Source of the DNA: Octopus vulgaris
Taxonomy: Eukaryota
Direction of reading: 5' to 3'
DNA length: 248,000 bases
Assembly: GCA_951406725.2 (NCBI GenBank)
Contig: OX597823.1
Span: 26,060,001 to 26,308,000, forward strand
Below the pieces are notes generated by a model that saw only the letters and a list, made by a program, of their open reading frames with translations, did not search any database and was not told the origin of the DNA. Within the stretch, counting starts at the first letter, position 1, and the number at the start of each line of letters is the position of its first letter. This document shows positions 80,557-196,203 of this stretch, piece after piece. The position numbers were made by a program, and so were the translations under genes.

Positions 80557-82976
80557 CTTTAGTATTATTAAGCTTATAAGTTGTGCTCCATGGACAGCTA
80601 AGGAGGGTACTCAGTCACTGATGAAATCCCAACACAAGATTAAAACTAGTCCAGTTCATTGCCCTTTTTCTGCTCATGGAGATATTCTATACAAAGACAA
80701 GATATTTACATCTGTCTATTACATACAGGTTTGGCTTAAGTCTAAAAAATATAGATTTTTTTTTTTATATAGATTAAACATACCACATTGTAGTATTGTA
80801 TGAAACTAGATAATGGAGTCTTAGAAATAGTATTTATAAAAAGAAAATAGGATGATTATAGTTGGAACATCTTTTATTATAGGTCTGATTGATTAAGGAA
80901 GATTTAGAGTTAAACAACACTAAAACATCAATAGCAATATGAAAGCAAATGGTGTGATAGTGCCATTTAGTCAACCTCATATCTACTGATTAGTTAATAT
81001 TATAGTGTGATAGTTTATAGTTTTCTCATAAATATATTTTACATTCTTTCTTATATTATCAACACAGCCTGCTCTACAGAGTGGTTGGTGTTAGGAAGGG
81101 CAACCAGCTGTAAAACTATGCCAAAGCAGACACAGAAGCATGGTGCAGGCTCCTGCCTGGCCAGCTCCTGTCAAACCATCCAATCTATGCCAACATGGAA
81201 AGAGGACATTAAATGATGATGATGATGATGATGATAGTGTGCTACTTATTGTCATTAGGCACAGGTGTTAGTAAATTATTAGATATTTGCTCACAGGTTT
81301 TGATCTCACTGTACATAAAGCAGCAGAAATTCTGGTAGTGTGCCAATTTTGCCAATCCAATACCTTGAAATATGTGCTAAAATGCTAGAGGTTTATTGGA
81401 TTAAATATACATAGTTTTAAATTTATTGTAGAATACTGAACTTAAATTATGTTCTTAGCTGCCGAAGCATCTGAAAGGCGCTATTTTCTTACATTAATCA
81501 CAACATTGGGGTTGTGATAAGAGAAAAAGAGATAGAGAGGATATAAAAACAGTTCATGCCATTTGACAAACATATGTGGCTCTTTACAAAATATCAACAT
81601 GACTCAAGGTTGTGCCACCAAGTTTAGACTTAAATTTGTCCTTACAGTCTAGAACGGGATTTCCTAACAGTTGTGAAAGGTAGGAGAGTCCAGTTTGCTG
81701 GACATTGTTGTAGAGCTGAAAGCGAGACAATTTCTACTCTTCTCCTCTGGAAGCCATCTACTCGCAATACCAGAGGGCGCACACTCTCCTACCCTGATGT
81801 AATCTCCAGGTATACAGGCATCCAGCAACAGGACCTCCGTAATGCTGGCGTAGCATGGTAAATTCCATTGTCTCGACCACGGTCGAACAATGATGATGAT
81901 GATGAACAGTTAAAGTGAGGGATAAATAGATTAACAGAAAAACATGTTACCTCATATTATTATTAATGAGGACTTTTCAAAATTTTACAGATGGGCTTCA
82001 GATCAGTTTTAAAAGTTTCTAAAATTAAAATCCAGAATCTGAAGAAAATGGTAAGAATTTGAATCAGTAAAATGGTATTAAACCTTTTGTTATCCACCCA
82101 GCTGAAACCGGTTCTGGCTCTGAGTACAAATGCCTTGTTTTCAAAGTTTTGAATTAAAATCTTCCACCAAAGCTTAGTAACAATTTACATTCCTAACACT
82201 AGCTGAATAATAACTAAGTTATTTTACTAAATTCTTTGTTATATTTAAAGTAATTGAAAGAAACATAAAGCATCTCAAAATAAATACAGTAATGAAAGGG
82301 TTAAACATCAAAAGATAGATATCAATCGGTTTGGTTACCACAAGGCTGGCAGAATTGGTAGCACTCCAGACAAAATGCTTAGTGATATTTCATTTGTCTT
82401 TATGTCTTGAGTTCAAATTTCAATGAGGTTGACTTTGCCTTTCATCCTTTCAAGATCAATAAAGTAAGTACCAGTTGATTGCTGGAGGGGTTGATATAAT
82501 TGACTTAACTCTTCCCTTGAAATTGCTGACCTTGTGCCAAAACTTGAAACCAATAAGTTTGATTACTATGAGAACATGAAGAGTGGAAAAACTGATTTTT
82601 TTTTTACAGAAACTTTATGCCAAATATTGCATTTTTTTCTCTTTTCTTGCAGCTTTTATGACAGACATTTGTTTTACAGTTAGCATATGAATTTAAAGAT
82701 TAAATTTATCTGTTGATTTTTTTTCTTTTATATTGTACCAGATATTCACATATATTTTGCTTATATTTTAATTCGTTTTCCTAAAATTCTTGCCAGGCGA
82801 TGCTAAATCTGCAATTATGTTGAAATGGTTCTAGTATTTTCATTTTTTGTTCTTTGTTTGACTATAAATTATGAAAAATAGCACAGTTTGAAAGTATTCA
82901 ATGGAGTGTTAGTATGATTCAGCAAACACTTTATGCCCACCCAAAGAGATGTATTTCACTGGTGTTACTGGAGGAG

Positions 82977-83019
<43 letters not shown>

Positions 83020-83022
<3 letters not shown>

Positions 83023-86000
83023 GAAGTTCTTGAGGCCTTCTACCATGCCATATATTTCCCCACAGATAAATCTAACACTGTACAAACATACTTAAACTGG
83101 AGACAGAAACACTCTGAAGTAAGACCCTACATAGACAGTAAGAAACTTGCCAACATCAGAAGAAATATTATAAAAAAAAAATTACTGACTGAAGTAGAGA
83201 TTGATCAAGTTAGACAAGCAATATCAGATAAAATGAACGAAGCTGCAGCTAGAGAAGATAATACAAAGGAAATAATTATAGACCAGCCCAGGGCTGATAA
83301 AAACGAAGTAAAGATTGAAAGAGTTAGTATAAGTGATAGGCAAAGTGAAATACTCCCTGAACCAATCATAAACACTAAGACAGATGAACAAATAGATAAA
83401 GAAAGTCACACAAATATTGACCCAACAGAACTACATGAGCTAAAAAATCAAATCATGATTGAATGGCTGAAAATTAAAGAAACCAGTATGGATGAACGTG
83501 ATGCACTCCCTAAAATCCGCAACTCTAACCAAAACATGAAAATAATTGGTAAAATCCAGCTTGCACTTAAGGATATAATTTCAGCTAATGATGATGATAT
83601 CACAAATCTCAACCACCTATACTATGCATCCGCGAAAATCTCAACGATCCTATGTGGTGTAAAGATTAGAAAACGGCAACATTCCCACAAAAAGCCTTCT
83701 TGGCAAGAGCGTCTGCAACAACAAATTAAACTATTTAGATCTGACATTGAATATTTAAAAAACCTTAAGGTTCACAAGACTACCAAACCTACAAAAACCA
83801 AAAAATTACTGAAAAAATACAATATGAAAACTATACTTGATATCGATGCCACCATAGAAACCATCAAACAAAAAGGTATCTGCCAAAGCTGCCCGCATAG
83901 CGAGGTATGAAAAGCATGTTAGATTTTTCAAGGACAACAACATGTTCAAAAATAATACCAAGAATTTTTACAGGAAGATAGGAAAAACAGCGTTTACTGC
84001 AAGGTCTGTACCATCAAAAGAAGAAGTGCAGGGATTTTGGAATAAAATTTGGGCAGAAGAAAAAACACACAACGAAAAGGCCCCCTGGATTGACAGAATA
84101 TCTACAGAACTGGACCTCTTAGAAGAGCAAAAGTGGGAGGGTGTCAAGGTAGAAGATATAAGATCTGCTCTCAGGAGGTCAAGCAAATGGAAGTCTCCAG
84201 GAAAGGATAAAATTCCTAACTTCTGGCTGAATGACTTCCCAGAGAGCCATGAACTGCTAACAGAACTTCACAATGATGTTTTGCAACATCCTAGTAGGAT
84301 ACCTCCTTGGCTAGTTAATGGGTTAACATTCCTGCTTCCAAAAAGTGAAGAAACAAATGAACAAAAAAACTATAGACCCATAACCTGCTTAACAACTATG
84401 TATAAAACGCTAACATCTGTCCTGACGGAATATACTTATAGCTTTTTAACAGACAGTAGCATATTCCCTAATGAACAGAAAGATGTAAACGTGGATCCTA
84501 CGGCTGTAAAGATCAACTACTCATCAATAAGTTGATCTTAGAAGATTGTCACAAACGACACAAAAACTTATCAATAGCCTGGATAGACTATAAAAAGGCA
84601 TTTGATAGCCTACCACATAGCTGGATTAGGAAATGCCTTGAAATGTATAAGATAGCACCTACTCTGCGAAACTTTTTCACTGTAAGTATGAGATCATGGA
84701 GAACCACACTAACTCTGAACAGTGACAATGAATCCCTAAATGCTGGTGATGTAAAAATTGTGTGTGGCATTTTCCAGGGTGACTTTTGTTTAGCCTTAAT
84801 ACCTCTCTCAAAACTGCTCAATGACGCGCAGTACGGGTATAAAATGTTTGATAAAAATATAAATCATCTCATTTACATGGATGATTTAAAGCTTTTTGCA
84901 AAAAATGACCAACAACTCAAGGGCTTACTAGCGATAGTCAAACAATTCAGTGATGACATCAGAATGCAATTCGGCCTCGATAAATGTGCAAAAGCTACCT
85001 TTATCAAAGGAAAAATGACAGAAACATCTAATGTTAACCTTGACCAGCAGAATGTCATAAAAGAACTAGACCCAGCAGAGAGCTAGAAGTACCTAGGGGT
85101 AATTGAAGGGAACGGAATAAGGCATTCAGAGATGAAGGAAAGGATCAGAAGAGAATGTTATCGAAGAGTGAGAGCAATACTCAAGACAGAGCTGAATGCA
85201 AGAAACAGGATCGAAGCGATCAATGCATTAGCCATACCAGTCGTGACTTACAGTTTCAATATCGTTAATTGGTCAATTACTGAAATATGTCAGCTCAACA
85301 GAAAAATAAGAAAACTGTTGACAATGCATAGAATGCACCACCCTAAGGCAGATACAGAACAACTTTATCTGCCAAGAAAAGAGGGAGGCCGTGGTCTTTT
85401 GCAACTGGCAATAACAATGAAGATTGCTACAATTGGCCTAGACACCTACCTGAAAAAGTCTGAGGACTGGATGTTAAAACTTGTCTCAAAACATGAAAAC
85501 AAGAAAGCATCATACTCAGTAACAAAACAGGCAAAGGAATATCTAAGTGAATTCCGAATACAACAAATTTCGGAATTAGAGATAGACATACAAGAAACAA
85601 GCACAGAAAAAGCTAGGCGCATAATAACTCGTGCCAAAACTGCGGCCTTAGATATTCTGAATAATAAATGGCAAGAAAAACCTCTCTATGGCAAATACCC
85701 AAAGAGAGCGAATAATGCAGATATTGACAAAGCCCTGACCCATCAATGGCTAATGGCCTCTGGCTTAAAATCTGAAACAGAAGGGTTTATCATAGCAGCT
85801 CAAGATCAATGCCTACCAACAAGAAACTACCAGGCCAACATATTAAAGAATGGCAGTAGCCCAACATGTCGTGTATGCCAACAACAAAATGAAACCATTG
85901 ATCATGTTGTCTCCAAATGCAGTCTTCTAGCGCCTACAGAGTACCTCAACAGGCATGATAGAGCTGCACAATATATTCACTGGGTAATTTGCAAAAACCT

Positions 86001-86620
86001 GGATTTGCCCCATGAAAAAAACTGGTGGGAACACAATCCACCTCCAGTGCTTGAAAATGACCACATCTCACTCCTCTGGAACTTCACCATTCAAACTGAC
86101 AGAAAGATAGATGCAAATAGGCCAGACATCATATTGAAAGACTTCAGACAAAGAACATGCCTCCTCATTGATATGACTGTCCCAATCGATATAAACGTAT
86201 CTGTCAAGACCTACCAAAAACTGAGCAAATATAAAGATCTTGAAATAGAAATCAGCAAAATGTGGAACCTGAAGACTAAAACAATACCTGTTGTCATAGG
86301 TGCCCTGGGAATGATAGCAAAAGGGGCTGATTGCTACCTAACTCAGATACCAGGAAACCCCAAAATGGCAGAAATTCAAAAGATAGTGCCTATGGGAACT
86401 GCTCATATCCTACGCAAAATACTCTCTATGTAATCCCAAGGTTTAAAACAATTTTTTTTTTTTATGTATTAGACATTCACTAGTACAACACCCCAAAAAA
86501 TCAAATATATGGCACACTAGGCATAACGACAACGTGAACTTCCAGCCTGTTGTCTCTTGAGGTCTCTGGGTGAGACTTGTACAACCAACTTGTACAGACA
86601 TAAAGCAAAAGTCAAACATA
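83020..86620 (+). mobile_element. Near full-length R4/Dong-clade non-LTR retrotransposon (RT, CCHC, restriction-like endonuclease) inside (AAT)n
   Basis: [57 protein letters not shown]. Two frameshifts (about 83880 and 84490), a small deletion after QGD and a stop at 85084-85086; (AAT)n on both sides. Confidence 0.93.
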
Positions 86621-86637
86621 GAATAATAATAATAATG

Positions 86638-86727
<90 letters not shown>

Positions 86728-86965: not shown

Positions 86966-87016
<51 letters not shown>

Positions 87017-87292: not shown

Positions 87293-87352
<60 letters not shown>

Positions 87353-87673
87353 TATATATATATATCATCAATCATCGTTTAACGTCCACTTTCCATACTA
87401 GCATGGGTTGGACGATTTGACTGAGGTCTGGCAAACTAGATGGCTGCACCAGACCCCAATCAGATCTGGCAGAGTTTCTACAGCTGGATGCCCTTCCTAA
87501 CACCAAACATTCCGAGAGTGTAGTGGGTGCTTTTATGTGCCACCAGCACGGAGGCCAGCTTCTTGCTCTGGCAACGATCACACTCATATGGTACTCTTAG
87601 CATTCCACTAGCATGGATGCCAGTCATTGAATTTGATTTTGATTTTGATTTCACTTGCCTCAACAGGTCTTTG

Positions 87674-87709
<36 letters not shown>

Positions 87710-87875
87710 CGGGACCAGCCATTTGAATGTGGCTAGGGACAGGGCGGGGTGGTGGGGGTGTTACTGATGCATTTAGCCCCAGGCGACTATAGACGTCACC
87801 AGGAGAGCCGACACCATCACGGTGTCCTTGCTAGCCTGCAAAGGGAGATCAGCCTCCCTGAAGATACGAATGCTA

Positions 87876-87917
87876 CACACGGACCGGTTTCGAGGTATTG
87901 CCTCTCGTCAGCGCATG
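87876..87917 (-). ncRNA. Minimal type-I hammerhead ribozyme, copy 1
   Basis: CATGCG-CTGACGA-GAGG caata CCTC-GAA-ACCGGT-C-CGTGTG: intact core, GUC site, palindromic stem III. Confidence 0.88.
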
Positions 87918-88234
87918 GCAAACACCGTTCTTCGTTGAGGGACTTCCTCTACAGGCTAGAAATATATAGATTTTCACTGTAAACACAGTCACTGGCGTTG
88001 AAAATCTGTTCGATAACAATAATAAATCTCTAAGCGAGGTATAAACAGTAACTGCTCTGTAATATAAGCGGGACCAGCCATCTGAATGTGGCTAGGGACA
88101 GGGCGGGGTGGTGGGGGTGTTACTTATGCATTTAGCCCCAGGCGACTATAGACGTCACCAGGAGAGCCGACACCATCACGGTGTCCTTGCTAGCCTGCAA
88201 AGGGAGATCAGCCTCCCCGAAGATACGAATGCTA

Positions 88235-88276
88235 CACACGGACCGGTTTCGAGGTATTGCCTCTCGTCAGCGCATG
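88235..88276 (-). ncRNA. Minimal type-I hammerhead ribozyme, copy 2
   Basis: Identical to copy 1, 359 bp away. Confidence 0.88.
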
Positions 88277-88576
88277 GCAAACACCGTTCTTCGTTGAGGG
88301 ACTTCAAGGACACCATGATGGTGTCGGCTCTCCTGGTGACGTCTATAGTCGCCTGGGGCTAAATGCATAAGTAACACCCCCACCACCCCGCCCTGTCCCT
88401 AGCCACATTCAGATGGATGGTCCCGCTTATATTACAGAGCAGTTACTGTTTATACCTCGCTTAGAGATTTATTATTGTTATCGAACAGATTTTCGACGCC
88501 AGTGACTGTGTTTACAGTGAAAATCTATATATTTCTAGCCTGTAGAGGAAGTCCCTCAATGAAGAACGGTGTTTGC

Positions 88577-88618
88577 CATGCGCTGACGAGAGGCAATACC
88601 TCGAAACCGGTCCGTGTG
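88577..88618 (+). ncRNA. Minimal type-I hammerhead ribozyme, copy 3 (inverted arm); predicted cleavage after C88612
   Basis: Reads directly on the + strand: catgcg ctgacga gagg caata cctc gaa accggt c cgtgtg. Confidence 0.88.
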
Positions 88619-88937
88619 TAGCATTCGTATCTTCGGGGAGGCTGATCTCCCTTTGCAGGCTAGCAAGGACACCGTGATGGTGTCGGCTCTCCTGGTGACG
88701 TCTATAGTCGCCTGGGGCTAAATGCATCAGTAACACCCCCACCACCCCACCCTGTCCCTAGCCACATTCAGATGGCTGGGCTTATATTACAGAGTAGTTA
88801 CTGTTTATACCTCGCTTAGAGATTTATTATTATATATATATATATATATATAAATGTCAGTGTACATGTACAAATTGATCCTTCTGACACCAAACCCAAC
88901 TGAGTTCCTTCATTCTATGATAAAAATCCCTCTATTT

Positions 88938-89288
88938 TAGGAGTTCTCAACCATTTTTTTTTTCTGTGGACCTCTTTGATTATTATTTCATTCTGGTGGA
89001 ACTCTATGGCCATTCAATGTTTATAAACTAGTTTTATAGAAACTTCTTTCAAAATTCCTATTTTGTTTTCCACACATTAACTTGAATAGGTTGAACTATG
89101 TAATATGTTAAAGAAATCCATCTGTTTCTTGCAATACATACCAATACATAGATCTAAAGCAAAAGATTTTTAGGGGCCCTTAAAATACTATTGTGGATTT
89201 TCAATTTACTATTTTGTTGCGTGGATCCCCACCCCGAAATCTCATAAGGACCCTCATGGGCCATATGGTCCCTGGTTGAGAAACACTG
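88938..89288. mobile_element. hAT MITE
   Basis: Degenerate TIRs (taggagttctcaacc / ggttgagaaacactg); TSD CTCTATTT on both sides. Confidence 0.8.
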
Positions 89289-90229
89289 CTCTATTTTCAA
89301 GTGTTTATATTTAGATTCTTCCCTACCATCATAATAATTTGTAAGAACCTATTAGGTTGTGTTCAAAAAATCATCTCAATGAGAGAGATTAGTTGTTTTA
89401 TTAAAAAAAAAATCTAAATTTTTGTTCAAGAAGTGTGTGTGTGTGTTAGCGCGCTGGGCAAAATGCTTAGTGGTATTTCGTCTATCATTACGTTCTGAGT
89501 TCAAATTCCGCCGAGGTCGACTTTGCCTTTCATCCTCTCGGGGTTGATAAATAAAGTACCAGTTTTGCACTGGGGTCGATGTAATCGACTTAATCCCTTT
89601 GTCTGTCCTTGTTTGTCCTCTCTGTGTTTAGCCCCTTGTGGGCAGTAAAGAAATAAATATTTGATAGAATTATTCACAATATATTACTGGTACTCTTTCA
89701 AATCTATGAGCAAGTTTCTTTATGGGTGATCTGCTTGTTAGAAATAGCTACTGAATCTCTTTGAAATTTCATCCAAACATCATTTAAAAAGAGGAGCAGA
89801 TTGGATAACGTAATCCTAGATATGCAATGTTTGAGAGAAGGATAGGATGACCAAGACTGGAAGCCTTTTTGATCATAGTTCTACTGGATAATATGTAACC
89901 TAGGACTAAGGTACAACAGATTAAAAGATTCATAGAGATTTCCAACTTTAGTATGAAATTGGTTGTACATTTGGGGAAGTGGGGCAATCATAATGATGTT
90001 AGTCATATATTCGAAAAGATAAGGCATAGTGAATTTCAATAACCACCATAAAGCTGGTTGGTATTTATTTCATATTCTTCTCAATTCTTAAAGATGTGAC
90101 AAGCAGTCATGATACCTTAAACAAGAGCAAATAAGTTTGATTTAACCCTCTTAGATAAAAACCTATCTGAGACCACCTCTGACATTTTGATATCAACCCA
90201 GCCCTGGTCTTATGGTACCAACCCATTTG

Positions 90230-194130: not shown

Positions 194131-196203
194131 ATGGAATTTAATGAAGAAGAAACTGTCAGTGTAAATACCAGGGACATTGACTTATCTCTTTTACGTAAGT
194201 CATTGCAAGCCAGGGGAAAAACAATTGATCAGCTTGTAAACTGCATATATTATGGCACCACTGAAGTCCGACAGTATATCCTTAATGAGTCGGATGTCAT
194301 TATTGAATGTAAGGCATGCCGCAACCTTTTCCGAGCATTACCTAACTTTGTGGCTCACAAGAGAATTTATTGTATGGATTCACACCTTAATGTCAACATA
194401 CCACTACTACGTGATCCAGAAGAAGTAATCTCTGTGAATCCTGAGCCACCAGATGGTGAAGAAGGTGATGATTTTATTGAAACGTCTATTGGCCTGGCGA
194501 AGCAGAATTTGATGAATGGACGAGATATGTCCCTTGATGAAAATTACATGAGTTCAGAGAGCGATACTGTAAGGTCAGAGACTCAGTTCTACGAGAGAAT
194601 TTGCAATCAGCTTGAAAAGCAAAAACCTGACCCCACCATTGGTGTTCGGTTCGAGCCAATTGAAGGAACTGATGTTGCTGTGAGAGTTGTGCCTCTCACT
194701 TCAGAATGTGATGCTAAGCTAGCTCAGGAAAACAATATATCAAAACAGAAAGTCCGTATACTAAGTCATCCGAATAAGATACAATCTAGCTCCAAGGTTA
194801 CTCTTAAAACGGATCTAAAAACAAAGAAAGATATTAAGTTAAAAGCGGATTTTCGACAATTGCGCTGCTTGGAATGTAATCGGACAATGTCCTCTCGGCG
194901 TTATCTGGTGGAACACATTCTGAATTTACACAGCGACAAGCGGCGTTATTTCTCTTGTCCTTACTGCAAAGTTAAGTTCCGTTATTTTCACTGTGTTGTA
195001 CGTCATCTTCGAAGAGTACATGAATGTAGCAAAGATGTGATAGACAACATGCGTGAAAATCTCAGGAACTCTAGCTGGATCGAGAACTCTCCCAACAAAG
195101 CAAATAACAAAGTGCAACCCTTGCCCTCTACATCTTCACATTTTAAAGGTGAAGCTTCAAAGATTATTTCCCCAAAGAACAAAGAACATTCTGGTAAAGT
195201 TCAAAAACTGAAAGTGAAGTTATTTAGTCAAAAGAACACTCCTAGCAAGAGCAACCATACAGAATTTTATCCTCCTCTTACTGTCGTCAAGCAGGAAGTT
195301 TTAAGCGAGGAAGAGTCTGCAAAGGATTCTGATTCAGAAGTCAACACGGCTAAAGATTTGGATGTGAAAGATATGACAGGAAAACACCGGCCTCCTACTT
195401 TAGCTCAGAGAAAGAAAATGGCCATGCTAATGGATAAGAAAAGCTTGACCTGTTTACAGTGCAATCGAGGCTTTTCGAGAATGTCTGGTTTGGTGCGACA
195501 TGTTGCGCACCATTTGGGCTGGAAACGATTCAAATGCAAGTTGTGTATGTACTCTGGCTATGACAGGTATGTTTGCAAATCGCATATTGAAAGAAACCAT
195601 CTTGGTAAAGTTCCTGGTCTAACAAGGAAAGTAATGGATTACTACATTGTTGACCTCGAGGATGGTAAAATTGTTAATCCAGATGGTACTAAAAGTAAGA
195701 AGTTAGGTCTCAAACTTGGTGTAAATCCTACTAAAAAGTCTACTTTATCATCAGCATCCACAGACATAAAACCAGTCACAGTATGCACAAGTCTGGGAAA
195801 TAGCAGTGGGCTTTCCAGTGTGGCCACTGTCAGACTTTCACCTCTTTCAAACGAACAACTCCAGTTGAGTAAAGGTTGTGCTATATCCGCCGACAAGTCT
195901 GAGAAACCTCTAAAAGGTTCTGACTTGAAGAAGAAACTTCTCTCTATGGTTGACTACAGAACTCTCAAGTGTCTTGAGTGTAATAGAACATGGAACAAAA
196001 GATCACATTTACTGCGGCATGCAGCACACCACATTGGTTGGAAGCGGTTTAAATGCAAGTTGTGTGTGTTCTCAGGTTATGATCGCTACATGTGTAAGTC
196101 TCATCTTAAACGATGCCATCTGGGCAAAATCCATGGACTCACAGTAAAAGTACTTGACTACTATATAGTAGATATGATGGAAGAAGAAAACGACGAGGTT
196201 TAA
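194131..196203 (+). CDS. ZNF800: 690-aa zinc-finger protein, ZNF800-like (1 C2HC plus 6 C2H2 fingers), single coding exon
   Basis: N-terminal QLVNCIYYGTTEVRQYIL.E.DVIIECKACRNLFRALPNFVAHKRIYC resembles the ZNF800 signature as recalled ([25 protein letters not shown]). ORF certain; orthology moderately supported. Confidence 0.9.
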   Translation: MEFNEEETVSVNTRDIDLSLLRKSLQARGKTIDQLVNCIYYGTTEVRQYILNESDVIIECKACRNLFRALPNFVAHKRIYCMDSHLNVNIPLLRDPEEVISVNPEPPDGEEGDDFIETSIGLAKQNLMNGRDMSLDENYMSSESDTVRSETQFYERICNQLEKQKPDPTIGVRFEPIEGTDVAVRVVPLTSECDAKLAQENNISKQKVRILSHPNKIQSSSKVTLKTDLKTKKDIKLKADFRQLRCLECNRTMSSRRYLVEHILNLHSDKRRYFSCPYCKVKFRYFHCVVRHLRRVHECSKDVIDNMRENLRNSSWIENSPNKANNKVQPLPSTSSHFKGEASKIISPKNKEHSGKVQKLKVKLFSQKNTPSKSNHTEFYPPLTVVKQEVLSEEESAKDSDSEVNTAKDLDVKDMTGKHRPPTLAQRKKMAMLMDKKSLTCLQCNRGFSRMSGLVRHVAHHLGWKRFKCKLCMYSGYDRYVCKSHIERNHLGKVPGLTRKVMDYYIVDLEDGKIVNPDGTKSKKLGLKLGVNPTKKSTLSSASTDIKPVTVCTSLGNSSGLSSVATVRLSPLSNEQLQLSKGCAISADKSEKPLKGSDLKKKLLSMVDYRTLKCLECNRTWNKRSHLLRHAAHHIGWKRFKCKLCVFSGYDRYMCKSHLKRCHLGKIHGLTVKVLDYYIVDMMEEENDEV

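What the first reader, a model, noticed from the sequence alone, without database searches (positions are those of the whole stretch)
87703..88832. Retrozyme-like tandem/inverted array with three intact hammerhead ribozymes
Seen: a 359-bp non-coding monomer repeated head-to-tail and then inverted. Each unit has a complete type-I hammerhead core (CUGACGA, stem II GAGG/CCUC, GAA, palindromic stem III ACCGGU, GUC site, stem I CAUGCG/CGUGUG). Copies differ at only a few positions, so the insertion is young. Established: minimal hammerheads with palindromic stem III occur in Penelope-like elements and non-LTR retrozymes, cleave as dimers, and release monomers that can circularise; inverted arms are typical of PLE insertions. 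Inference: read-through would release a 359-nt, possibly circular, RNA. The inverted arm could also form long dsRNA (ADAR or small-RNA substrate). The monomer has extra hairpins and a G-quadruplex-like run on the opposite strand. I do not know of this family being described in octopus.
Basis: partly seen in the sequence, partly recalled or inferred. Interest (0 to 1): 0.9.

Follow-up and report, generated by a model that had tools for sequence, protein, structure and literature searches.

The report
Octopus hammerhead retrozyme insertion, tandem-inverted
This is one insertion of a small non-coding mobile element carrying self-cleaving hammerhead ribozymes, a kind already known from many animals but apparently not yet reported in octopus, and its layout preserves the marks of how Penelope-like retrotransposon machinery pastes such elements into DNA.

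Summary
At 87708-88831 a 359-nt non-coding unit forms two head-to-head arms (1.67 units on the - strand, 1.47 on the + strand). It carries three identical type-I hammerhead motifs and sits inside a (TA)n microsatellite. Rfam scores the motif only 12.3 bits (threshold 34). A rule-based scan, covariation of helix I and helix II in unrelated metagenome relatives, and a strand-specific fold (z = -3.8) support the ribozyme. One relative lies in a complete RT + GIY-YIG Penelope-like element (PLE).

The locus fits a non-LTR retrozyme, a non-autonomous PLE dependant. It has tandem plus inverted 5'-truncated copies, an AT-rich target and a one-sided 49-nt tail. A variant shared in register by both arms indicates that both DNA strands primed reverse transcription on an uncleaved multimeric RNA.

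- The ribozyme is the canonical metazoan type, not the minimal PLE variant.
- Only the - strand has two ribozymes and could release a monomer.
- A transcript across both arms folds into a ~477-bp duplex.
- The arms differ by 1.5%, so the insertion is not very young.

The window is Octopus vulgaris OX597823.1. No other copy and no PLE lies in it. This is a new member of a known kind, of modest interest.

The parts
87677..87707 (.). Left flank of the target: (AT)15 microsatellite. Its last 5 nt (ATATA) are also unit sequence, so the boundary is ambiguous over 87703-87707.
87708..88305 (-). Left arm, 598 nt = 1.67 units in ribozyme sense on the - strand. In monomer coordinates (position 1 = first nt after the GUC cleavage site) it covers 295-359, then 1-359, then 1-174. 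Its sense 3' end abuts (TA)n and it has no tail.
87876..87917 (-). Hammerhead copy 1 (type I). Predicted cleavage is after C at 87882.
88235..88276 (-). Hammerhead copy 2 (type I). Predicted cleavage is after C at 88241, 359 nt from copy 1 on the same strand.
88190..88304 (-). 115-nt spacer: the 5'-most part of the left arm, with no counterpart in the right arm. The two arms were therefore 5'-truncated at different points (monomer positions 295 and 52).
88305..88305 (.). Head-to-head (5'-to-5') junction of the two arms, with a 1-nt overlap (C).
88305..88831 (+). Right arm, 527 nt = 1.47 units in ribozyme sense on the + strand. It covers monomer positions 52-359, then 1-223. A 4-nt deletion (TCCC, monomer ~167-170) lies at 88779/88780.
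88577..88618 (+). Hammerhead copy 3 (type I), the only one on the + strand. Predicted cleavage is after C at 88612. Rfam Hammerhead_1 aligns here full length at 12.3 bits.
88783..88831 (+). One-sided 49-nt 'tail': the sequence (monomer 175-223) by which the right arm runs past the point where the left arm ends.
   Evidence: compare PMC11167929 and PMC8557442
88832..88852 (.). Right flank of the target: (AT)n microsatellite, followed by unique sequence AAATGTCAG.
87736..87758 (+). Canonical G-quadruplex motif GGGACAGGGCGGGGTGGTGGGGG on the antisense of the element (the sense RNA is an AC-rich tract). Further copies lie at 88095-88117 (+), 88377-88399 (-) and 88736-88758 (-).

Best explanation
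This is one insertion of a 359-nt non-coding, hammerhead-bearing, non-autonomous retroelement of the animal 'non-LTR retrozyme' kind. Such elements depend on the reverse transcriptase/GIY-YIG endonuclease of a Penelope-like element (PLE) encoded elsewhere in the genome.

Shown:
- the repeat architecture;
- three intact canonical type-I hammerheads;
- insertion inside a (TA)n tract;
- two arms whose sense 3' ends face outward into the (TA)n and whose 5' ends meet in the middle;
- different 5' truncation points (monomer positions 295 and 52);
- different 3' ends, 49 nt apart (positions 174-179 and 223);
- both arms running across the ribozyme cleavage site.

Inferred: a PLE protein cut both strands of the AT-rich target and each 3' end primed reverse transcription at one of two internal start sites on the RNA. 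The two 5'-truncated cDNAs were then joined head-to-head. The template was an uncleaved multimeric transcript, or a circle of at least two units, because position 116 is A in the inner unit and C in the outer unit of both arms.

If the left arm is transcribed on the - strand, its two ribozymes can pair through the ACCGGU palindrome into a double hammerhead. That would release a 359-nt RNA with 5'-OH and 2',3'-cyclic phosphate ends that a host tRNA ligase could circularise. This locus may equally be a silent fossil.
For: Architecture and termini.

Ribozyme:
- The descriptor hits only these three sites, against 0.15 per simulated window.
- Eleven metagenome loci in about six families share the core. 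Helix I, which was not part of the search pattern, pairs in 31 of 42 cells against 10-23 in slid registers. Three families share a 6-bp helix I followed by a C.U mismatch. The free pair 10.2-11.2 covaries as A-U, G-C and C-G.
- Rfam HH9 recognises three of those relatives. Hammerhead_1 aligns the octopus motif full length in the same register.
- The single-hammerhead fold is disfavoured (-8.4 against -11.5 or -20.2 kcal/mol). The double hammerhead lies within 2-6 kcal/mol of the dimer MFE.
- The circular sense monomer has z = -3.8; the antisense has z = -1.6.

Link to PLEs:
- Locus L002 carries this hammerhead subtype upstream of an 839-aa RVT_1 + GIY-YIG ORF.
- Published PLE signatures match: partial tandems, an inverted 5'-truncated copy at the 5' end, a one-sided tail and (TA)n bias (PMC8557442).
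- A PLE protein cleaves and extends both strands at AT-rich DNA, starts reverse transcription at two internal sites that define the tail, and mainly uses unprocessed RNA (PMC11167929).
- Animal retrozymes are related to PLE pLTRs (bioRxiv 10.64898/2026.07.22.740005).
- Perfect (TA)n tracts of 8 or more repeats cover only 1.04% of the window.
- O. vulgaris has 31 recently active PLE families (PMC13282606).

Real rather than artefact: the arms are asymmetric. They differ by 7 single-copy substitutions, 5 of them CpG transitions, plus one indel.
Against: - There is no second copy of the unit and no PLE remnant in the 248-kb window, so family status, copy number and preferred termini rest on one insertion.
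- Rfam scores the motif far below threshold (12.3 against 34 bits).
- The predicted active dimer is not the minimum-energy fold. It is about 9 kcal/mol above the MFE in the 598-nt left arm.
- The tail is 44-49 nt, against the 30-40 nt described for PLEs.
- The unit is 49-51% G+C, at or above the upper limit quoted for animal retrozymes.
- The multimer-template inference rests on one shared variant.
- No expression data could be consulted.
- The orthologous locus in O. sinensis could not be fetched.
- The assembly is ONT-based, and ONT consensus errors can concentrate at methylated CpG, so some arm differences could be errors.
Confidence: 0.7

Rival explanations
1. This is a remnant of an autonomous PLE: a solo or internally deleted pseudo-LTR left by a full-length element, not an independently propagating 359-nt non-autonomous family.
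For: Hammerheads of this subtype sit in the upstream non-coding region of a complete PLE (L002). Retrozymes and pLTRs are homologous in Xenopus. No other copy in the window shows the unit to be a family of its own.
Against: The head-to-tail period is exactly 359 nt with unbroken continuity through the whole cycle in both arms. Tandems of a full PLE would have a period of several kb. No RT or GIY-YIG coding remnant lies in or near the array.
Confidence: 0.12
2. The structure arose at the DNA level. An ordinary tandem repeat or satellite was partly duplicated in inverted orientation by replication template switching or break repair, without two-strand target-primed reverse transcription.
For: A DNA-level inverted duplication would also explain the position-116 variant shared in register by both arms. 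(TA)n is self-complementary and prone to hairpins and breakage.
Against: A copied arm should carry the same outer end. Instead one arm ends at monomer position 174-179 and the other at 223, and both abut (TA)n. The centre is not a symmetric palindrome: there is a 115-nt spacer and only a 1-nt junction overlap. The whole pattern matches documented PLE behaviour.
Confidence: 0.08
3. The inversion is an assembly artefact, a fold-back or chimeric long read propagated into the ONT-based assembly. The true locus would be a simple tandem dimer.
For: The source assembly (GCA_951406725, O. vulgaris) is ONT-based. PLE tandem and inverted structures are known to trouble assemblers. No independent assembly of this locus could be retrieved.
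Against: Fold-back artefacts give symmetric, identical arms. Here the arms start and end at different unit positions, differ at 7 substitutions plus a 4-nt indel, and are each joined to different unique flanking sequence through (TA)n.
Confidence: 0.04
4. The hammerhead-like string is a fortuitous or decayed motif without catalytic activity, and the repeat is an ordinary non-catalytic SINE-like or satellite element.
For: Rfam scores it only 12.3 bits against a gathering score of 34. The relaxed descriptor yields 0.15 chance hits per window. The active fold is not the predicted MFE. PLE-type hammerheads often cleave poorly in vitro.
Against: All core nucleotides, G10.1-C11.1, A15.1-U16.1 and the GUC site are present. 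The exact architecture has a chance expectation of about 3e-7 per window by my arithmetic. Independent relatives covary in helices I and II, and one sits in a bona fide PLE. The motif lies in just the genomic context (tandem ~360-nt units) where such ribozymes are known.
Confidence: 0.06

Closest known systems
Metazoan non-LTR retrozymes (Cervera & de la Pena 2020, PMC7229834), e.g. the ~350-390-nt Mytilus galloprovincialis repeats and the 330/353-nt axolotl repeats
   Same: - Non-coding head-to-tail units of a few hundred nt (359 here), each with one type-I hammerhead.
- No LTR, PBS, PPT or ORF.
- A short helix III that implies action as dimers, as in the amphibian elements.
- A strongly structured sense RNA.
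   Different: - Only 1.67 + 1.47 units at this locus, arranged head-to-head; long direct arrays are typical.
- G+C is 49-51%, at or above the quoted upper limit.
- Copy number, expression and circularity are unknown here.
- I found no report of the kind in a cephalopod.
Penelope-like element insertions (Craig et al. 2021, PMC8557442; Frangieh et al. 2024, PMC11167929)
   Same: - A partial tandem plus an adjacent inverted 5'-truncated copy.
- A one-sided terminal extension ('tail').
- Insertion into an AT-rich or (TA)n target.
- A hammerhead in the repeated non-coding part.
- The cDNA crosses the ribozyme site, consistent with unprocessed RNA as the template.
   Different: - No RT/GIY-YIG ORF: the whole element is 359 nt.
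- The tail is 44-49 nt, not 30-40 nt.
- The start sites lie ~175 and ~223 nt downstream of the cleavage site, against ~85-92 nt in the Anolis element.
- The clades with a reported (TA)n bias do not all carry hammerheads (Naiads lack them).
Canonical metazoan type-I hammerheads (Rfam Hammerhead_1 RF00163 and HH9 RF02275; Schistosoma Sm-alpha, newt satellite 2)
   Same: - CUGANGA...GAA core, G10.1-C11.1, A15.1-U16.1 and a GUC site.
- Helix I of 6 bp and helix II of 4 bp.
- Helix III reduced to a palindrome.
- An internal loop after helix I (UUGC/UAGC) that resembles HH9's UUAC/UAC.
   Different: - Scores below every Rfam threshold.
- Two G.U pairs in helix I.
- C at position 7.
- Helix III has no loop at all (ACCGGU), so a monomeric helix III is essentially impossible.
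L1 'twin priming' inversions
   Same: Two cDNAs primed from the two strands of one target site on one RNA are joined 5'-to-5'. Both sense 3' ends therefore face outward.
   Different: - No poly(A) and no L1 endonuclease site.
- Both arms exceed unit length because the template is multimeric.
- For PLEs, extension of both strands is an intrinsic property of the protein in vitro, not an occasional accident.

Membership tests
Hammerhead ribozyme, type I | Conserved core C3-U4-G5-A6-N7-G8-A9, G12-A13-A14, A15.1-U16.1 and H17, with helices I, II and III in type-I topology (helix I open) | tested here: met
   Direct reading and the descriptor scan find all core positions, the G10.1-C11.1 pair and the GUC site in three identical copies.
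Hammerhead ribozyme, type I | Score at or above the Rfam gathering threshold for a hammerhead covariance model (clan CL00010) | tested here: not met
   There is no hit in 7-kb or 1.1-kb scans at E<=10. With 91 nt as input, Hammerhead_1 aligns model positions 1-45 at 12.3 bits against a gathering score of 34, E = 2.3. As a control, the same library misses 3 of 6 related families and scores the PLE-borne copy at only 24.8 bits.
Hammerhead ribozyme, type I | Helices supported by covariation in independent relatives | tested here: met
   Helix I pairs in 31 of 42 cells against 10-23 in slid registers. Pair 10.2-11.2 occurs as A-U, G-C and C-G across 7 families. The relatives were found with a pattern derived from this motif, but helix I and pair 10.2-11.2 were left free.
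Hammerhead ribozyme, type I | Site-specific self-cleavage | not testable with these tools
   Thermodynamics only. The double hammerhead lies 2-9 kcal/mol above the MFE, depending on context.
Minimal PLE hammerhead (min-HHR, Cervera & de la Pena 2014) | [quoted passage not shown] | tested here: not met
   Helix II is 4 bp without a bulge and helix I is 6 bp. The motif fits the 'canonical metazoan' description in the same paper.
Animal non-LTR retrozyme | Non-coding head-to-tail repeats of ~150-450 bp, each with a type-I hammerhead, without LTR, PBS or PPT | tested here: met
   The period is 359 nt. Only short ORFs (77 aa or less within a unit) are present, with no homologue.
Animal non-LTR retrozyme | Low G+C (<45-50%) | tested here: inconclusive
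   The monomer is 49.3% and the array 50.7% G+C, against 36.3% for the window.
Animal non-LTR retrozyme | Dispersed multicopy family in the genome | not testable with these tools
   There is no other copy in the 248-kb window. No tool searches octopus genomes by DNA. Indirect routes failed.
Animal non-LTR retrozyme | Expressed as linear and circular monomer RNAs | not testable with these tools
   No expression data were available.
Penelope-like element (autonomous) | ORF with a telomerase-like RT plus a GIY-YIG endonuclease | tested here: not met
   None is present in the array or elsewhere in the window. The upstream ORFs at 82933-86433 are a LINE (RVT_1 + zf-RVT). tblastn with the L002 PLE finds nothing.
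PLE-type insertion signature | Partial tandem plus an inverted 5'-truncated copy adjacent at the 5' end | tested here: met
   definition in PMC8557442
PLE-type insertion signature | Optional one-sided tail (30-40 bp) reflecting two internal RT start sites | tested here: inconclusive
   A one-sided extension of 44-49 nt is present. It is longer than described, and a single insertion cannot show that these are preferred start sites.
PLE-type insertion signature | AT-rich or microsatellite target | tested here: met
   Both ends lie in (TA)n. Such tracts cover 1.04% of the window.

The most novel reading that the evidence does not exclude
The unit belongs to a currently active, circRNA-producing retrozyme family in octopus. 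This head-to-head locus then has two outputs. Left-arm (- strand) transcripts would yield 359-nt circles through double-hammerhead cleavage. Transcripts crossing the junction would yield a ~477-bp perfect hairpin dsRNA that feeds the very active cephalopod ADAR editing or small-RNA pathways. That would link ribozyme-bearing mobile elements to dsRNA surveillance in a cephalopod.
Probability: 0.08. Interest if true: 0.6.

Novelty: new member of a known kind. Interest (0 to 1): 0.3.

Why it matters
Hammerhead-bearing retrozymes and their dependence on Penelope-like elements are established, so the locus adds no new principle. It matters in two smaller ways.

First, it extends the kind to cephalopods. 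The open-access papers I searched on cephalopod repeats, including a detailed 2026 O. vulgaris repeat annotation, mention no ribozyme or retrozyme. Such units are probably filed there under 'unknown' or 'Penelope'.

Second, this one insertion is an unusually legible natural record of the integration mechanism. It shows both target strands primed, two alternative internal start sites (a one-sided tail), a (TA)n target, and a multimeric uncleaved template. This is what the 2024 in-vitro study of an Anolis PLE predicts, seen here for a non-autonomous element in a mollusc.

If genome-wide copies confirm the two termini, the family would be a convenient system for studying how PLE proteins recognise RNA in trans.

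Tried and rejected
1. Rfam scans of 7 kb and 1.1 kb found no hammerhead. The only hits were microRNA models matching the (TA)n/(CA)n low-complexity tracts, which I reject as artefacts.

2. TRF did not report the 359-nt period, because each arm holds fewer than two full copies.

3. The MAFFT alignment of the hammerhead relatives (A1) put gaps in the 5' flank and was unusable for helix I. I counted pairs directly in the register fixed by the core.

4. Search for an autonomous PLE in the window. Pfam on the ten longest ORFs shows that the ORF block at 82933-86433 is a decayed LINE, not a PLE. tblastn with the L002 PLE protein found nothing significant, though it is a distant probe.

5. Search for other copies through spurious gene calls. 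The 77-aa antisense ORF of the unit has no homologue in the 5.8-billion-protein collection.

6. Search for the orthologous locus in the second assembly. Exact look-ups of the two LINE ORFs upstream are not on record. A homology search with the 433-aa ORF found nothing above 59% identity, so neither octopus assembly has a gene call there. Walking from the zinc-finger gene ~105 kb downstream of the array would need more look-ups than allowed.

7. The hammerhead pattern has 0 matches in viral contigs and 0 in 596 Gb of prokaryotic genomes.

8. I considered a last protein search with the L002 PLE to fish out octopus PLEs. I judged the chance of reaching the right family too low for its cost.

9. 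ADAR editing of the template as the source of the arm differences is rejected. When polarised against the other copies the changes are mostly G-to-A or C-to-T at CpG, not A-to-G.
Full report
**1. What is in the sequence**

Reading 87300-89300, blastn of the first unit against the whole window, the repeat finder and a sense-strand alignment agree on the layout. A 359-nt unit occupies 87708-88831 as two arms that meet 5'-to-5' at 88305.

- **Left arm (87708-88305).** It carries the ribozyme sense on the - strand. In monomer coordinates (position 1 = first nucleotide after the GUC site) it covers 295-359, a full 1-359, and 1-174.
- **Right arm (88305-88831).** It carries the sense on the + strand and covers 52-359 and 1-223, with a 4-nt deletion (TCCC) at 88779/88780.
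- **Together.** The arms form a 475-nt inverted repeat, 99% complementary, around a 115-nt spacer.
- **Flanks.** Both outer ends run into (TA)n (87677-87707 and 88832-88852). Beyond these lies unrelated unique sequence.
- **Copy number.** The 248-kb window contains no other copy.

**2. The hammerhead**

Three identical 42-nt motifs lie at 87876-87917 (-), 88235-88276 (-) and 88577-88618 (+). They read CAUGCG / CUGACGA / GAGG-CAAUA-CCUC / GAA / ACCGGU / C | CGUGUG. This is a type-I hammerhead with every invariant core nucleotide, G10.1-C11.1, A15.1-U16.1, a GUC cleavage site, a 6-bp helix I (two G.U pairs) and a 4-bp helix II. Helix III is reduced to the palindrome ACCGGU.

Rfam does not report the motif in ordinary scans. 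Given only 91 nt, Hammerhead_1 aligns end to end in the same register, but at 12.3 bits against a gathering score of 34. I therefore tested the motif in four other ways.

- **Descriptor scan.** A deliberately loose type-I descriptor hits only these sites in the window. It gives 0.15 hits per simulated window. For the exact architecture my arithmetic gives about 3e-7 per window.
- **Independent relatives.** I scanned public metagenome contigs for the core, leaving helix I, loop 2 and pair 10.2-11.2 free. This returned 11 loci in about six families. Helix I pairs in 31 of 42 cells against 10-23 in slid registers. The helix I sequences are quite different (GUCUAA/UUAGAC, ACACAG/CUGUGU, GCGG/CCGC). 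Three families, including this one, share a 6-bp helix followed by a C.U mismatch. Pair 10.2-11.2 occurs as A-U, G-C and C-G.
- **Rfam control.** Rfam's HH9 model recognises three of these relatives, all below threshold, and misses three others. The Rfam miss is therefore a sensitivity limit for hammerheads with almost no helix III.
- **Folding.** The single-hammerhead fold is disfavoured (-8.4 against -11.5 or -20.2 kcal/mol). The double hammerhead formed through ACCGGU lies within 2-6 kcal/mol of the dimer optimum. The circular sense monomer is unusually stable (-116.6 kcal/mol, z = -3.8) and the antisense is not (z = -1.6).

The architecture matches the published description of canonical metazoan type-I hammerheads: helix I 6 bp, helix II 4 bp, helix III 1-2 bp with a palindromic loop, active as dimers. 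It does not match the 'minimal' PLE variant (PMC4209133).

**3. Link to Penelope-like elements**

One metagenome relative (L002) carries this hammerhead subtype upstream of two ORFs. The second ORF is 839 aa with RVT_1 followed by a C-terminal GIY-YIG domain, which is the defining PLE architecture. In another relative (L009), telomere-like repeats abut the ribozyme, as in endonuclease-less PLEs.

Published work describes the relevant signatures.

- PLE insertions are partial tandems, often with an inverted 5'-truncated copy at the 5' end. They have an optional 30-40-bp tail at one end and a bias for microsatellites such as (TA)n (PMC8557442).
- A purified PLE protein cleaves and extends both strands of AT-rich DNA. 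It starts reverse transcription at two internal RNA sites whose spacing explains the tail, and it mainly uses unprocessed RNA (PMC11167929).
[quoted passage not shown] A 2026 preprint argues that they derive from PLE pLTRs.

**4. How the locus most likely arose**

The following points are shown by the sequence.

- The sense 3' ends of both arms face outward into (TA)n.
- The arms have different 5' truncation points.
- The right arm ends 49 nt further along the unit than the left arm, giving a one-sided tail at 88783-88831.
- The left end shares 5 nt (ATATA) with the target; the right end shares none.
- Both arms run across the ribozyme cleavage site, so the template was not a cleaved linear monomer.
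- Position 116 is A in the inner unit and C in the outer unit of both arms. All seven other differences occur in a single copy.

My inference is as follows. Both strands of one (TA)n target primed reverse transcription on the same kind of uncleaved multimeric RNA, or on a circle of at least two units, at two alternative internal start sites. The two cDNAs were then joined with 1 nt of overlap. Rolling-circle copying of a monomeric circle would need the same substitution to arise twice, which I estimate at about 1%.

Perfect (TA)n tracts of 8 or more repeats cover only 1.04% of the window, so the target choice is unlikely to be random.

No PLE lies in the window. The ORF block at 82933-86433 is a decayed LINE, and a PLE protein probe finds nothing. 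The partner must therefore act in trans. O. vulgaris is reported to have 31 recently active PLE families (PMC13282606).

**5. What the locus could do now**

Only the - strand has two same-sense ribozymes, 359 nt apart. Only left-arm - strand transcripts could therefore release a monomer. In that 598-nt context the double hammerhead costs about 9 kcal/mol over the MFE.

The + strand has one ribozyme. Any transcript crossing the junction is predicted to form about 477 inter-arm base pairs (MFE about -1050 kcal/mol), which would sequester the ribozymes. Whether the locus is transcribed at all is unknown.

**6. Source and age**

The window's 690-aa zinc-finger ORF is carried by OX597823.1 (GCA_951406725.2) and CM016867.1 (GCA_006345805.1). 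The window is 100% identical to the first over 6,073 nt. It is therefore Octopus vulgaris OX597823.1:26,060,001-26,308,000. The second record is O. sinensis (PMC10700109).

The two assemblies differ by 8 substitutions in ~6 kb (0.13%), and the species split is put at ~2.5 Mya. The arms differ by 1.47%, or 0.42% without CpG sites. The insertion therefore probably predates that split.

A published octopus repeat clock (JC distance 0.09 for about 25 My) would give about 2 My. The local yardstick gives roughly 8-28 My. The array is still CpG-rich (observed/expected 0.75, against 0.30 for the window), and five of the seven differences are CpG transitions. That is ordinary genomic decay. It argues against a fold-back assembly artefact, as does the asymmetry of the arms. 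One caveat is that ONT consensus errors can concentrate at methylated CpG.

**7. Verdict**

This is a new member of a known kind, an animal non-LTR retrozyme that depends on PLEs. I found no report of the kind in cephalopods. Its main value is as a clear natural example of PLE-type integration primed on both strands. Catalysis, circular RNA, copy number and the autonomous partner remain untested.

Noticed in passing
window 87366-87676: A ~310-bp SINE-like element lies between two (TA)n tracts, immediately left of the array, and has 35 blastn hits across the window. The same long (TA)n microsatellite therefore appears to have received at least two independent retroelement insertions.
   Followed up: partly
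window 82933-86433 (+): A decayed LINE is split into four ORFs (325, 197, 184 and 433 aa; RVT_1 and zf-RVT). It is followed by (AAT)n tracts at 86622-86726 and 86966-87016. Its closest database relatives are only 55-59% identical and come from shrimp, coral, sea anemone, starfish and fish, so this LINE clade is widespread in aquatic animals.
   Followed up: partly
window 88779/88780: The only indel between the arms, a 4-nt deletion (TCCC), falls within ~5 nt of the point where the left arm ends, at the boundary between 'body' and 'tail' in the right arm. It could be coincidence, or a slip or template jump at an RT start site.
   Followed up: no
window 87736-87758 and three further copies: A canonical G-quadruplex motif lies on the antisense strand, which is the first-strand cDNA. 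In the sense RNA it is an AC-rich tract 30-50 nt upstream of the inferred RT start site. This recalls the AC-rich stem-loop where the Anolis PLE initiates.
   Followed up: no
window 87708-88831 against the whole window: The array is 50.7% G+C with CpG observed/expected 0.75. The surrounding window is 36.3% G+C with CpG observed/expected 0.30.
   Followed up: yes
window 194131-196203 (+): A 690-aa single-exon ORF with weak, sub-threshold C2H2 zinc-finger matches is identical in protein sequence in the O. vulgaris and O. sinensis assemblies. It served to identify the source of the window.
   Followed up: yes
L002 1-5750 (metagenome contig Ga0209260_10001188): A complete endonuclease-positive PLE: a hammerhead, then a 454-aa ORF, then an 839-aa RT + GIY-YIG ORF. 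The contig has a 246-nt, 100% identical terminal redundancy, so it is assembled from a tandem or a circle with a 5,504-nt unit. L003 is a frameshifted relative.
   Followed up: partly
L009 2090-2160: Telomere-like repeats (CCCTAACCCTAGGGTTAGGGTTAAGGTTAGGGTTAGG) directly abut helix I of the same hammerhead as in L002. This is the arrangement described for telomere-attaching PLEs.
   Followed up: no
L007 1-1873 and L011 1-1688: L007 is a 1,774-nt unit with 99-nt terminal redundancy, a 22-nt internal tandem repeat and a hammerhead scoring 46 bits to Rfam HH9, which preserves the UUAC/UAC loop-1 motifs. L011 has 642-645-nt tandem units, each with a hammerhead that Rfam misses. Both look like larger retrozyme-like elements from unknown hosts.
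   Followed up: no
window 87295-87365 and 87664-87721: The Rfam 'mir-297', 'mir-1277' and 'mir-466' hits are low-complexity (TA)n/(CA)n matches, far below the gathering scores. They are not microRNA genes.
   Followed up: yes
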